Positions 43,190 through 53,376 of a stretch of 64,000 nt of DNA are shown here, one piece after another. This stretch comes from Ostrea edulis (lineage: Eukaryota). The first letter of the stretch is position 1. Every line of letters starts with the position of its first letter. The stretch is from positions 5,518,001 through 5,582,000 of the forward strand of contig NC_079165.1 in the NCBI RefSeq assembly GCF_947568905.1. Reading direction: 5' to 3'. The translations under genes were made by a program, and so were the position numbers. The notes under the pieces are model-generated. The model was not told where the DNA came from, searched no databases, and saw only the letters and a list, made by a program, of their open reading frames with translations.

Positions 43190-46100
43190 TTAGGATGCAC
43201 TGGAACACAATTTCTGTTGACAAAAGTCGGTTTGTTGATACACTGGGTAAAGTCGGCAAAATGCACATAAAGCGTCCGTAATCACCACTATGCCTTTATT
43301 CCCTGTACCTGGTTAAAAAAAAGTAAGAAAGGTATACGTGTATGTAGATACTGAACGTCTCTCAAGGGTATATCTAAACAATCATAATCAATAAATACCT
43401 TCAAATATGTCGTCCTTGACCTTGAGGTCCTTTGTACGGATTAGTTTCCTCTGAGGACTGATTATTTCTCTCAGAGGGCCGATTATTTTTTTCTCTCTTG
43501 TACTGATTTTCCCCTGTTTAACATCGAGATTTGTGCAATGTTTTTTGCAATCAGTTGAATCTTTATATGAAGGTTGAAGACAAAAAATGCAAAATGGTAT
43601 AAGTTCCTCATTAGTCTCCTTCGTATTGTCCATTTTATCGTTTGTATTTTTTATGTATCCCTTTAATACATTTATTCCTTCGGTCCTCAGAATGTTTGGG
43701 CCTGGTTCTGCATCTATGGACTTCGCTGAAAAACAGCACCAGTTTGAATATGTCTTTTCACTATGAACAGGTGTACATTGTTCATGTATATTTAAACATG
43801 ACACAGGAGCGACATCATATAAAAGATTAATAATAACTTTCCTTAACTGTAGACCGGATCTAATTTAAACACGTGTCCATATTGTGAAAGTAAATGGGAA
43901 ATCGGATTTAACAAGAATGACGAATTAAATGGATAAGATGATTTTCCCCAAAATATCTCTTTAAACGTCATTAGTGTATTGTTCTAGAAAACTTTCTCGG
44001 ATATGCTGTAAATGTGTACAAGGTATCACTTGATTACTGACTTTAATAATTTGTTATTATAGAATTTTAGGTGAATCATACGGTTGTACATAGTCTACTT
44101 TCATGCTTGTGCATACTTGAAATTTTTGTTTGTGTATGAAAACGTGAAGATAACGAATAGCAATCAATATCTATGAAAATATTTATTTTCTTATTTTCTA
44201 TTAGTTCGTATACTCTCATCCTATGATACCGCGGGTCCTACGGTACTGACGTATTTCGGTTTTAAATACGTTAAGCATGAACCTTGACATCTGTCAGCGA
44301 GTTATTTTTAGATATTAAATAACTATTGCACACACATTTTGTCTCGACTGAAAAAAAAAATGTCCAGAATTTTGGCAAGTACGGTCTTTGAACTTATAAC
44401 GAATGAAAATTTAATATCTTTTCTTGGTTTTATAATTGTTGAAATTTTCCCATTAGTGATACCCCAGTTTACATGTCACGAGAAAACAACCTTTTTTCAC
44501 AATTTTAGCACCATTAGGCCGGCATACGCTGTATTTTTATAAATACCACGGTATCGTAGTACCCGCGTTTACTATTGTATACTTTATGGCCTCACCATCG
44601 ATCACTTGAAAGCAAGTAGTTACATTGATATTTGTTTGCTTATTTATATGAATGAAAACAACAATATATGAGGTATTTACAAAACATTAACGATTGACTG
44701 AATTAAGGCTGACAGCTCTTAAAACAAATTGAAACTGTTAAGTACAGCGGTATCATAGGACCACGGCATACTTGCAATTTTTGCGTTTTAAAATCAATTT
44801 GTTGAGCAGAAGATATCAGTTCTTGTGAAGATATCAATTCTTGTGGATAAACAGATGTCACACTAGTATGTCAGCTTTAACTTCCACACGGATATGTACA
44901 TGTTGGTAACCGTCTTAAAAGTAGAAAACCATAATCTAAATATGTCGATTGTTGAATACCGTGATGTTGTCAATATTGATGGCTAAGTATGTCAATATGA
45001 TTGTTCCTCATGATTTCGCAACATACTTTTACTGGGCCCCATTATATCTAATCAAAGGTTTTACCTATTCAACGAGAGGATGTCGCTTGTAAAATGCAAT
45101 TATTCATGACCAAAAACAATTAAACCGTTACACTTAACCAACACTACGTGATAGGCTAGAAATCAAAAGATAAGTTAAACTTAATTTAAGAAGGCGTATT
45201 CCGGAATGGCTAACTACTAATATTAAAAGAATCCACATATACATAACACAAGTTTTGGGTCAGTGACCTCCTGTCTGGAAGATTTCGGTGATTTTACTAC
45301 GATGAAATATATTTTTGATAATAACGACATTTGTTTCAAGTTTAGTTAGTTTACAGTACGTCATATTTGACTGTGAGGATCAACAGTATTATATGAATGA
45401 GAGGATGTTGTTTTAATCTACTAACAATCTGTCTATAAAACAACAGTACTATGTGAATATGAGGATGTTGTTTTAATCTACTAACATTCTGTCTATAAAT
45501 CAACAGTACTATGTGAATGTGACGATGGTGTGTGTTTTATTTAATAACAATATTTCTATAAATGAACTATGTCGTGGGGCATTGCCCTCCTGGATTAATG
45601 CTCGTTTCCGACGAATTCTTTTCATGCCCTGTTTTGAAGTGGTGAAAGAAGTAATGTTCTTCCTTTCATTTCCTACTGGCTGACTTTTATGGAAAGTCCT
45701 GGACTTCTAACCTATCAGATATTTTACTTAGTGTAGAAGGTTGTTTTTCATTTCAAATGGTCATTTACAAGTGTTTCTTCCATTTGTGTCGTTTCAACAC
45801 AATCGTGTATAGTTTGTGTATTCCTATGTTTACAACCACATTTAGTCCTTTACATTTGTCAACGAGATCTGTATTGTAATGATTCTTTCAAATCGTCAAA
45901 TCGACAAGTATATATTATGCAATTTTGTCTGATTTTCATAGTCCCTTCAAGTTATAGATTTCCCAAAACAGAAGCACCCAGATTAAGACAGTAACATATC
46001 GTACAAACTCTCCCTCTATCAAGTTATTAATCACAGAATATTTTTGGTGTAACATATACGTAGTATCTACAATGGAGTTATTTATAGCTAAAATAACAAG

Positions 46101-46456
46101 GTAAGGGAGCGTGAATTGTTTACGTCGTGCACAATCATAAACCACACCCAAAGATGAGTGACAATTAAGTATGAAAATGAAACAAGTTTAACAGCAAAAA
46201 ATAAAAGAGCAATAAATTAATTCTAAAAATATGAAACGTTGATAGTTGGTCGTAAAAGAGGGTCTTAAAACTAAAGATGAAGACACGCTCTAAAGTATGA
46301 TAGTCATGTTCTGATTTAGTATATATTGTAAAATATGATAAGAATCATACCTGGTTGCAGATGTAATGAAAATCTAGGAGCACTAGAAGCAGTATATACT
46401 TCAATCACCTGACACACAGCCAAAATTAAACCCAGACGATGGAGAATCACACACAT
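43190..46456 (-). CDS. Unknown secreted precursor with two 4-Cys modules, paralog 1 (183 aa). Exons 46456-46351, 43725-43399, 43308-43190
   Basis: All junctions are GT-AG, phase 1, and the frame is open: MCVILHRLGLILAVCQVIEVYTASSAPRFSLHLQP A KSIDAEP...LIPFCIFCLQPSYKDSTDCKKHCTN...DDIFE G TGNKGIVVITDALCAFCRLYPVYQQTDFCQQKLCSSAS*. TATAAA lies about 50 nt upstream of the ATG. Confidence 0.85.
44220..44759. mobile_element. Possible MITE-like element
   Basis: cctatgataccgc ... gcggtatcatagg exact 13-bp inverted repeat; no TSD seen. Confidence 0.35.
45379..45560. repeat. ~60-bp tandem repeat, ~3 units
   Basis: atcaacagtactatgtgaatatgaggatgttgttttaatctactaacaatctgtctataa is repeated. Confidence 0.8.
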
Positions 46457-51045: not shown

Positions 51046-51439
51046 GTGTACTGAAAATTTGATGAAAAGGTTGATGAAGCTGTAAGATAGTACACGTGCT
51101 CCAAAATTGTAGTTTGTTAGCATTATCAAGGGTGTATCGTAGTCTTGCAAAAGTCTTGCAAAATAAAACACCATAGAAATATTGATTTAATAATAATCAA
51201 AAGCATTAATGCTATTGATACATAAAAGAACATTGTGTTATAATCACTGTCAATGCTCTCAGAAAAACGATATATCCTTGTCCATCTGTATCACTGCGTT
51301 ATAGCATAACAAATAAAAAAGATAAGCATCATATGAAAACAGACAACCCTCTAGTAGATTGTCCGTGACTAAATGTAAAATAAGCAACGGCAAACCAGAA
51401 AATTGTTGATTATACTCCATATGATGGAGATCGTGAAGG

Positions 51440-53376
51440 TTACGATGCGCTGGAGCAGAGTTTCTGTTGACAGATGGACGTTTGTTGATACACCTGATAC
51501 AGCTTGCAGAAGGCACATAAAGCGTCGGTAAACACTTTACTTTTACTTTTATTCCCTTTACCTGGAGAATGCAAACAACAAAATAGAATAATGCATTAAC
51601 AGGAACTAGAAATCCTCGAAGACTATATCTAAATAATCCTATTCAATCGTTACCTTTAGATAATCTGTCGTTGATTGCGAGTTCCTTTGTAGTGATGATT
51701 TTTCCCTGTTCCCCCTCAAAGTTTGTGCAGTGTTTCTGGCAATCTGTTGAATCTTTATAGATAGGTTGTAAACAAAACTTGCAGAAACTTAGCACTGCCC
51801 TGGTTCTTTTTATCATGTCAAGTGTATCTTTTGTATTGTTGATGGGTTTCTTCAATATGTTGATCTCGTCAGTTCCTGGAATGTTCTCGACAGTTCTCGG
51901 AATGTTTGGGCTTGGTTCGGCATGCATGAACCTCGCTGAAAAAGCACACCAATTTGAAAATTACCATTTTACTACACGTACCAGTGTATCTATTAACTAC
52001 ATTAGGAAAAAGCACAACTCAGCTTGTAATAGAGAGGTAGTATATCACAAAGATTATCAATTTCTCCAATATAGACCGGATATCATATAAACACTTATCC
52101 GTGATGCAATTAGTAAATGAAATCCTTATGTTCGAAATTGAGGAAAATGGCCAATCTTAAGATTAGGATGAATATCATCCAAACCTCGTCCTTACACGTT
52201 GTTAAAGCATTGTTCCAGGAAACACTTTTCTGGAATGCTAATGTGAACTGATTACCTATAACTCATTCTAGTTTTGTTTTGTAGTGGGATATGAGGAAAT
52301 GTCTACATTTCTACACACATTTTCTGACTGTATATTCATGTACCTTAACATTTTATTTGTGCATTTATAGACCATACTTTCTGTTTGAGCATGCTTTTAT
52401 TTTCTGTGCCTTACAACAGGCTTGTTAAAACATCGATATTCATTTTTTGTCGAGGGACAGAGGCTATGATACCATCTACCATGTACTTTAAACTCCCCTC
52501 AGCTCTGTACATATTTTAGCTGTCTTACAGTGATTGATTGATTGTATTGGCAAACAAGATCTTTATAAGGACCACATAATCTGAAATATGCTGACTGACA
52601 ATTTTGCACAAGGTTGTAGACTTATAGCATTTTAGACGAGGTGATTTGTGAGTGTAAATGGGCAATTTTTTATTTGAAATAATCATTCGCCTGTGTTCGT
52701 TCAGTTTATGTTGTTTTCACGCACATGTATAGCTTGTAAACATATATGTCAATATTTTACCACATGTTCTAAGACACTCCAAAGCATAGCTCCTTCACAC
52801 TTGTTAACGAGATTTTTATTGTATGTGATTCTTACAAATTGTCTAGTACATGCATACAATACGGCTCTGTCTGATTCTTGTTAGTCCCATACAGTTATGG
52901 ATTTCCTAAACAAGAAAATCTTTCACAGACTTCCCTTTTGCTGGTATGCATCGACGTGGTAATCACAAATAAATTAGTTTGTGTAATATGTACGTGATAT
53001 ATATCTATTTATAGATTGGATAACAAGAGAGCAAGGACTGTTTATGTCTTGTACAATCATCAACCACACCCAAAGACGAGTGTTAATTCAAAAAGAAGGC
53101 TGACGAAAAATGAAACGAATAGAAATTATGTATAAAATAATACAAGAAAAATCAATCCTTTGATGAGCGTTTTAGAAGTAAAAGTAAAGAAACGTTTTGT
53201 TTATATTCCAATGCTATTGTCCTAATTCAATATACATTTTAAAATATGATATCTATGATGATAATCATACCTGGTTGTGGATGTGATAAACGTCTAGGAG
53301 CCCTGGGAGCAGTGTAGACTCCAATCACTAGACACACAGTCAAAATCAAACTAAAACGAAGTAGAATTACGCACAT
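51440..53376 (-). CDS. Unknown secreted precursor with two 4-Cys modules, paralog 2 (169 aa). Exons 53376-53271, 51935-51654, 51561-51440
   Basis: Same exon phases as paralog 1: MCVILLRFSLILTVCLVIGVYTAPRAPRRLSHPQP A RFMHAEP...MIKRTRAVLSFCKFCLQPIYKDSTDCQKHCTN...RLSK G KGNKSKSKVFTDALCAFCKLYQVYQQTSICQQKLCSSAS*. TATATAA lies about 45 nt upstream of the ATG. Confidence 0.85.

What the first reader, a model, noticed from the sequence alone, without database searches (positions are those of the whole stretch)
43190..53376. Pair of unassigned secreted precursors, each carrying two Cx2C-x10/11-Cx3/4C modules
Seen: two intact 3-exon genes (183 and 169 aa), invisible in the ORF track, with identical exon phases, signal peptides and TATA boxes about 45-50 nt upstream. 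Linkers have diverged with indels. The two modules are strongly conserved: FCxFCLQPxYKDSTDCxKHC and LCAFCxLYxVYQQTxxCQQKLCSSAS*. The modules resemble each other (xFC, Tyr, Thr, C-x3/4-C), which suggests internal duplication. Known: 4-Cys helix-loop-helix peptides with similar spacing include scorpion kappa-hefutoxin (Cx3C-x9-Cx3C) and plant alpha-hairpinins. Inference: a bivalve family of processed, disulfide-stapled peptides (defence, pheromone or neurohormone-like). Paralog 2 has basic sites (RR, KRTR) upstream of module 1. I do not recognise the family.
Basis: partly seen in the sequence, partly recalled or inferred. Interest (0 to 1): 0.8.

Follow-up and report, generated by a model that had tools for sequence, protein, structure and literature searches.

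The report
Oyster-only secreted double four-cysteine protein pair
Two neighbouring flat-oyster genes encode small secreted proteins with two strongly conserved four-cysteine modules; they belong to an uncharacterised family found so far only in oysters, and its role is unknown.

Summary
Two intact three-exon genes lie on the minus strand, A at 46456-43190 (183 aa) and B at 53376-51440 (169 aa). Both have GT-AG introns in phase 1/1, aligned TATA boxes, hydrophobic N-termini and two four-Cys modules (Cx2C-x10-Cx3C and Cx2C-x11-Cx4C).

Relatives turned up only in oysters (Ostrea, Saccostrea, Crassostrea/Magallana), all unnamed. There was no Pfam family, no solved-structure relative and no paper.

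RNA-like contigs from two unidentified oysters carry the uninterrupted ORF. In one species, comparison with a genomic contig shows the homologous phase-1 intron 2 removed.

Modules are under purifying selection (dN/dS 0.08 between A and B) while linkers drift (0.70) and change length by 21-nt tandem duplications.

AlphaFold models are low confidence (pLDDT about 47) but make each module a helix-loop-helix.

No cleavage sites are conserved, so 'processed precursor' is not supported. The selection pattern and low copy number fit a conserved binding or signalling protein better than an antimicrobial peptide or toxin. This is a real orphan family of moderate interest.

The parts
43190..46456 (-). 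Gene A (LOC125682259, 183 aa), whole span from ATG to stop
46351..46456 (-). Gene A exon 1: ATG, signal-peptide-like N-terminus, ends in phase 1
43399..43725 (-). Gene A exon 2: N-linker, module 1, mid-linker
43190..43308 (-). Gene A exon 3: module 2 and stop codon
43517..43600 (-). Gene A module 1 (Cx2C-x10-Cx3C)
43193..43276 (-). Gene A module 2 (Cx2C-x11-Cx4C), C-terminal
46503..46508 (-). Gene A TATA-like box, starts 52 nt upstream of the ATG
46457..46608 (-). Gene A 5' flank alignable with that of gene B (shared promoter block)
43439..43488 (-). 21-nt in-frame tandem repeat (2.4 copies) within the extra 21 residues of A's mid-linker
51440..53376 (-). Gene B (LOC125680701, 169 aa), whole span from ATG to stop
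53271..53376 (-). Gene B exon 1: ATG, signal-peptide-like N-terminus, ends in phase 1
51654..51935 (-). Gene B exon 2: N-linker, module 1, mid-linker
51440..51561 (-). Gene B exon 3: module 2 and stop codon
51709..51792 (-). Gene B module 1
51443..51526 (-). Gene B module 2
53420..53425 (-). Gene B TATA-like box, starts 49 nt upstream of the ATG
53377..53540 (-). Gene B 5' flank alignable with that of gene A
51864..51906 (-). 21-nt in-frame tandem duplication (2 copies) at the extra 7 residues of B's N-linker

Best explanation
This is an old tandem duplicate pair of a gene family found so far only in oysters (Ostreidae). Each gene encodes a small protein that enters the secretory pathway through an N-terminal signal peptide. 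Each protein carries two modules of about 25 residues with four invariant cysteines each. Module 1 lies in exon 2, and module 2 lies in exon 3 at the C-terminus. Each module most likely folds as a helix-loop-helix stapled by two disulfides. The two modules are joined by a poorly constrained, flexible linker and probably stay in one chain rather than being cut apart. The conserved module surfaces, above all the C-terminal module with its near-invariant GDALCAFC start, are the working part. The most likely function is specific binding to a conserved partner, as an extracellular ligand or signalling protein. Shown: gene structure, family membership, distribution, splicing in a relative, and the conservation pattern. 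Inferred: secretion, disulfides, hairpin fold, no processing, and the binding or signalling role.
For: The gene models equal the RefSeq proteins. The three-exon layout, with one module per exon, recurs in S. echinata, C. virginica and C. angulata. Four RNA-like contigs of about 1-1.6 kb carry the uninterrupted ORF. In one species an 81-nt GT..AG intron is removed exactly at the Gly codon that is invariant among the four full-length proteins first aligned, in phase 1, and the intron 1 acceptor is also phase 1. Every full-length relative has a hydrophobic N-terminus. All eight Cys are invariant. Mean pairwise identity is 58% for module 2 and 38% for module 1, against 19% for the linkers. dN/dS for A vs B is 0.08 in the modules and 0.70 in the linkers; in a second pair it is 0.18 vs 0.39. 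Two independent AlphaFold runs place a helix through each Cx2C and a second helix at each Cx3/4C. A Pro or Tyr-Pro after the second Cys and a Ser/Thr plus acidic residue before the third Cys fit a helix end and a helix cap (read directly). No cleavage sites are conserved. O. edulis has two copies in the window. The roughly 20-kb loci of other oysters hold one annotated copy; the C. virginica locus also holds a module-2-like fragment.
Against: Structure confidence is low (mean pLDDT 46-48, modules 54-68), so the fold is not established. The disulfide pattern is unknown. I found no O. edulis transcript contig in the collections, so expression of these two genes rests on the RefSeq models and on the relatives. 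Tissue and timing of expression are unknown. dS in the modules is near saturation and the regions are short, so the dN/dS values are rough. The species behind the RNA-like contigs are not identified. Basic residues are frequent in the linkers, so lineage-specific cleavage cannot be excluded.
Confidence: 0.55

Rival explanations
1. Processed precursor: the chain is cut at basic sites, and the two four-Cys hairpins act as separate small peptides, as plant alpha-hairpinins are released from modular precursors.
For: The linkers are rich in Lys and Arg. KK, KR or RK pairs occur in most members, and B has RR and KRTR upstream of module 1. Modular precursors that yield several helical hairpins are known in plants (PMC7191063).
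Against: No basic site is conserved in position across the family. Several pairs are followed by Pro. Module 2 is preceded by a conserved non-basic stretch, and some members have no dibasic site before module 1. There is no amidation signal at the C-terminus.
Confidence: 0.2
2. Host-defence effector: a cationic, disulfide-stabilised antimicrobial or toxin-like peptide of oysters.
For: The family is lineage-restricted, secreted, cysteine-rich and Lys-rich, especially around module 2. In O. edulis the pair sits next to two H-type lectin genes.
Against: The mature modules are under purifying selection and the signal region is not specially conserved across genera. That is the reverse of the pattern described for mussel MgCRP-I, where the pre-pro region is conserved and the mature peptide is hypervariable (PMC4558851). 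Copy number is low. The lectin neighbours are not found beside the gene in three other oysters.
Confidence: 0.15
3. Metal-binding protein: each Cys4 module coordinates a metal ion (Zn or Cu) instead of forming disulfides, for example inside the metal-rich vesicles of oyster blood cells.
For: The Cx2C...Cx3/4C spacing resembles zinc knuckles. The only sub-threshold sequence hits include a probable treble clef (DUF2116, E 0.34) and a RING finger chain (E 1.4). From general knowledge, oysters accumulate much Zn and Cu.
Against: All those hits are at chance level. A signal peptide sends the protein into the oxidising secretory pathway. The models draw helices, not knuckles.
Confidence: 0.07
4. Annotation artefact or non-functional ORFs.
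For: No O. edulis transcript contig was found in the collections searched.
Against: Both ORFs are intact. The exon structure and the eight Cys are conserved across three oyster genera, RNA-like contigs exist in relatives, and the modules show purifying selection.
Confidence: 0.03

Closest known systems
Cysteine-stabilised helical hairpins: plant alpha-hairpinins, scorpion kappa-hefutoxins, cone-snail framework XIV peptides (PMC7191063)
   Same: Both have four Cys in two close pairs separated by a loop of about 10 residues. A helix-loop-helix is predicted here too. Plant members also come as several modules in one precursor behind a signal peptide.
   Different: The defining motif is Cx3C...Cx3C. 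Here the first pair is always Cx2C, and the second pair is Cx3C in module 1 and Cx4C in module 2. No sequence or fold match to any solved member was found. Cleavage sites are not conserved, and the taxon is different. Any likeness would be convergent.
MgCRP-I of Mytilus (PMC4558851)
   Same: Both are lineage-restricted bivalve families of small secreted cysteine-rich proteins without known function, found from sequence data.
   Different: MgCRP-I has six Cys in another pattern, a conserved pre-pro region with a hypervariable, positively selected mature part, and many copies. Here the Cys modules are the conserved part and copy number is low.
Aplysia attractin-type protein pheromones (recalled from general knowledge, not tested beyond the searches)
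   Same: Both are molluscan, secreted, small and helical, with disulfides, and have a short strongly conserved surface motif.
   Different: Attractin is a single hairpin with six Cys. No Pfam or PDB sequence hit came back, so there is no evidence of kinship.
Pfam DUF7419 (PF24194)
   Same: Module 1 of A gives a weak local match (18.6 bits, E 0.0016).
   Different: The score is below the 27-bit gathering score, is weaker in B (about 11 bits), and is absent in the three relatives scanned. I treat it as chance.

Membership tests
alpha-hairpinin / CS-alpha/alpha (kappa-KTx, conotoxin XIV) | Cys motif C-x3-C ... C-x3-C (PMC7191063) | tested here: not met
   Module 1 is Cx2C-x10-Cx3C and module 2 is Cx2C-x11-Cx4C in all ten aligned family members.
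alpha-hairpinin / CS-alpha/alpha | Two antiparallel helices joined by a loop | tested here: inconclusive
   AlphaFold gives a helix, a loop and a helix for each module in two runs, but pLDDT in the modules is only 54-68.
alpha-hairpinin / CS-alpha/alpha | Disulfides C1-C4 and C2-C3 | not testable with these tools
   This needs disulfide mapping or a solved structure.
alpha-hairpinin / CS-alpha/alpha | Detectable similarity to a solved member | tested here: not met
   phmmer and a profile search of PDB sequences gave nothing relevant at E up to 10. The best Foldseek E-value was 3.1.
Pfam DUF7419 (PF24194) | Score at or above the gathering score of 27 bits | tested here: not met
   17.9-18.6 bits for A, about 11 bits for B, and no hit for P0007, P0008 or P0004.
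Neuropeptide / prohormone precursor | Conserved basic cleavage sites flanking the conserved peptide, often with a C-terminal Gly for amidation | tested here: not met
   No basic site is conserved in position, and the C-termini end in Ser, Lys, Val or longer tails without Gly-basic.
Known Cys-rich hormone and pheromone families I had in mind (insulin-like, CHH/ITP, eclosion hormone, attractin) | Match to the Pfam model of the family | tested here: not met
   Pfam scans of A, B and three relatives at E up to 10 returned none of them.
Zinc knuckle / treble clef / RING-type Cys4 sites | Match to a zinc-binding family model, usually in a cytosolic or nuclear protein | tested here: not met
   Only chance-level hits came back (DUF2116 E 0.34; a RING finger chain E 1.4). 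All members have a signal-peptide-like N-terminus.
Twin Cx3C / Cx9C (CHCH) mitochondrial proteins | Cx3C or Cx9C pairs and no signal peptide | tested here: not met
   The spacing differs and a hydrophobic N-terminal signal is present.
The oyster family itself (LOC125682259-like) | Signal peptide plus two four-Cys modules, one per exon, with phase-1 introns | tested here: met
   Both window genes and the loci of S. echinata, C. virginica and C. angulata show this layout.

The most novel reading that the evidence does not exclude
The family is an oyster-specific extracellular signalling protein, hormone-like or pheromone-like, built on a so far undescribed double helical-hairpin fold. In that fold a Cx2C pair on one helix is stapled to a Cx3C or Cx4C pair on the next. 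The near-invariant C-terminal module would be the receptor-binding face.
Probability: 0.2. Interest if true: 0.6.

Novelty: new variant of a known kind. Interest (0 to 1): 0.38.

Why it matters
Oysters are ecologically and commercially important, and most of their lineage-restricted secreted proteins have no known role. This family is small, easy to recognise and conserved across three oyster genera in exactly two short modules. That makes it a tractable candidate for a conserved extracellular ligand or binding protein. Public RNA-seq and proteomic data could place it in a tissue and life stage at little cost. If the fold is confirmed, it would add a Cx2C/Cx3-4C variant to the known disulfide-stapled helical hairpins. 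As it stands it is an orphan family already present in RefSeq as uncharacterised proteins, and nothing found so far marks it as an unusual mechanism.

Tried and rejected
- Pfam scans of exon translations and of five family proteins gave only sub-threshold hits that differ from member to member.
- PDB sequence searches with P0002 and with the family profile gave nothing relevant.
- Foldseek of the better model against PDB gave a best E-value of 3.1, which is meaningless given the low confidence. I did not send the second model.
- Literature searches for DUF7419, the six LOC or accession identifiers, five run accessions and four short family motifs returned zero papers.
- The word-based protein search with exon 2 of A, then with P0002, found only O. 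edulis proteins. The profile of four members was needed to reach Crassostrea.
- Synteny with the H-lectin genes was checked and is not shared by other oysters, so it does not inform function.
- The species and tissues behind the Logan runs could not be identified with these tools.
- I did not scan metagenome, viral or prokaryote contig collections, because they would not change the verdict.
- Rfam and tRNA scans of the window were empty.
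Full report
**What is there**

It also finds one unrelated chance match elsewhere.

The minus strand and a script that joins the predicted exons as they stand give two gene models:

| Gene | Exon 1 | Exon 2 | Exon 3 | Protein |
|---|---|---|---|---|
| A | 46456-46351 | 43725-43399 | 43308-43190 | 183 aa |
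| B | 53376-53271 | 51935-51654 | 51561-51440 | 169 aa |

- All introns are GT..AG, and both introns of each gene are in phase 1.
- The window holds no further copy.
- TATA-like boxes start 52 nt (A) and 49 nt (B) upstream of the ATGs, at aligned positions.
- About 150 nt of 5' flank and the first 500 nt or so of intron 1 still align between the copies at roughly 66% identity. This is therefore an old tandem duplication of the whole transcription unit.

**How the searches were done**

- Public searches used references only. These were exon translations and, for the full length, database proteins P0002 and P0003.
- The search tool returned P0002 and P0003 itself, and they are identical to my joined models A and B.
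- I sent no joined string of my own to any search tool.
- Joined strings were made only in local scripts to test the splice model. One local tblastn of them against the window itself was run, and dN/dS was computed.

**Identity**

- P0002 is 'uncharacterized protein LOC125682259' and P0003 is 'uncharacterized protein LOC125680701', both of Ostrea edulis.
- The window lies on chromosome record OX387705.1 of assembly GCA_947568905.1, near 5.55-5.57 Mb.

**Relatives**

- A full HMMER pass of P0002 over 1.84 billion representative proteins gave seven hits. Apart from fragments of the same two genes, they are a Saccostrea echinata protein, a spliced ORF from sequencing runs and a metagenome fragment.
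- A profile of four members added Saccostrea cucullata, Crassostrea virginica, C. angulata and C. gigas (LOC105348267), plus further run-derived ORFs.
- Those with a source name are called 'uncharacterized' or 'hypothetical'. None carries a Pfam domain.
- Within the reach of these searches the family is confined to oysters.
- No paper mentions any of the identifiers or motifs.

**Splicing evidence**

- The loci of S. echinata, C. virginica and C. angulata have the same layout: signal exon, module 1 exon, module 2 exon.
- Four contigs of about 1-1.6 kb from four sequencing runs carry the complete ORF without interruption.
- For one of these species a genomic contig is also on record. The alignment shows an 81-nt GT..AG intron removed exactly at a Gly codon, in phase 1. 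That Gly is invariant among the four full-length proteins first aligned. The acceptor of intron 1 is also in phase 1.
- This is direct support for the homologous splice sites, though not in O. edulis itself. I found only genomic, unspliced ORFs for O. edulis (P0001, P0005, P0006).

**Conservation**

- All eight cysteines are invariant in ten family members. Module 2 starts with a near-invariant GDALCAFC.
- Mean pairwise identity over eight non-redundant members:

| Region | Identity |
|---|---|
| Module 2 | 58% |
| Module 1 | 38% |
| Signal region | 28% |
| Each linker | 19% |

- Nei-Gojobori dN/dS between A and B is 0.08 for the modules and 0.70 for the linkers. The mid-linker alone is about 1.
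- An independent pair of spliced ORFs gives 0.18 against 0.39.
- These values are rough, because the regions are short and dS is near saturation.
One lies in A's mid-linker (43439-43488) and one in B's N-linker (51864-51906).

**Structure**

- AlphaFold with the ten-sequence alignment gave mean pLDDT 46.3 for A and 47.9 for a 137-aa relative.
- Both runs draw the same picture: a helix running through each Cx2C, a loop, and a second helix at each Cx3C or Cx4C. The linkers are disordered. pLDDT in the modules is 54-68.
- The sequences fit this. A Pro or Tyr-Pro follows the second Cys, and a Ser/Thr plus an acidic residue precedes the third Cys, like a helix end and a helix cap (read).
- The model is too weak for fold comparison, and Foldseek returned nothing.
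- A profile-profile comparison of module 1 with module 2 gives a local P-value of 1.7e-4 at 49% probability over 19 columns. This is suggestive of an internal duplication but not proof. Both module exons start in phase 1, which is compatible with an exon duplication.

**Interpretation**

- The pattern is conserved modules, free linkers, signal regions that are not specially conserved between genera, and few copies: two in O. edulis and one annotated gene in each other locus examined.
- This is the reverse of the pattern described for bivalve effector peptides such as MgCRP-I (PMC4558851).
- It fits a protein whose modules must recognise a conserved partner.
- Cleavage sites are not conserved at the module borders, so I think the chain stays whole.
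- The Cys spacing fails the Cx3C...Cx3C definition of alpha-hairpinins and kappa-hefutoxin-type peptides (PMC7191063). Any likeness is one of working principle, not of membership.
- A metal-site reading cannot be excluded but has only chance-level support.

**Neighbourhood**

- Two H-type lectin genes lie beside gene A on the other strand.
- That linkage is not seen in three other oysters, so it says little about function.

- I stopped when I noticed.
- The comparison with those families rests only on the Pfam scans, which did not return them.
- No contig looked human, no stretch of N occurs in the window, and no step needed referral.

**Verdict**

This is a genuine, uncharacterised, oyster-restricted family of secreted double four-Cys proteins. 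It is moderately interesting as an orphan family with a probably new hairpin variant, but not a surprising kind of thing for a bivalve genome.

Noticed in passing
window 39673-41286 (+) and about 33190-33867 (+): Two H-type lectin genes lie next to gene A. Their last exons, 40981-41286 and 43 kb-distal 33544-33867, match PF09458 at E 2.4e-20 and 6.5e-17. The linkage is not seen beside the family gene in S. echinata, C. virginica or C. angulata.
   Followed up: partly
window 45381-45562: A 60-nt unit is repeated three times in tandem (86% matches) inside intron 1 of gene A.
   Followed up: no
window 46457-46608 and 53377-53540: The two promoters share a block about 100-150 nt upstream of the ATG that is better conserved than the coding linkers. 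It contains a TAATTA-type core and is a possible shared regulatory element.
   Followed up: partly
L007:6098-6262 (C. virginica), with ORF L007:5486-5737: An unannotated, divergent module-2-like exon (Cx2C-x13-Cx4C) lies about 4 kb upstream of LOC111126937, with a signal-peptide-like ORF before it. It may be a second, divergent or decayed paralogue.
   Followed up: partly
L006:1169-1504 and L006:2525-2617 (JGI metagenome 3300045951): A metagenome contig carries exon 2-like and exon 3-like parts of a further family member, about 44% identical to A. It is presumably host DNA of an unidentified oyster in an environmental sample.
   Followed up: partly
window 49196-49699 (-): A 167-aa ATG ORF lies in the slightly more GC-rich stretch between the two paralogues. 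It has no family match and no gene is called there in the public annotation.
   Followed up: partly
window 61754-62290 (+): Nested ORFs of up to 178 aa have only a sub-threshold Pfam hit (BT_3044-like_C, 21.6 bits against a 23.1-bit cut-off). This may be low-complexity sequence.
   Followed up: no
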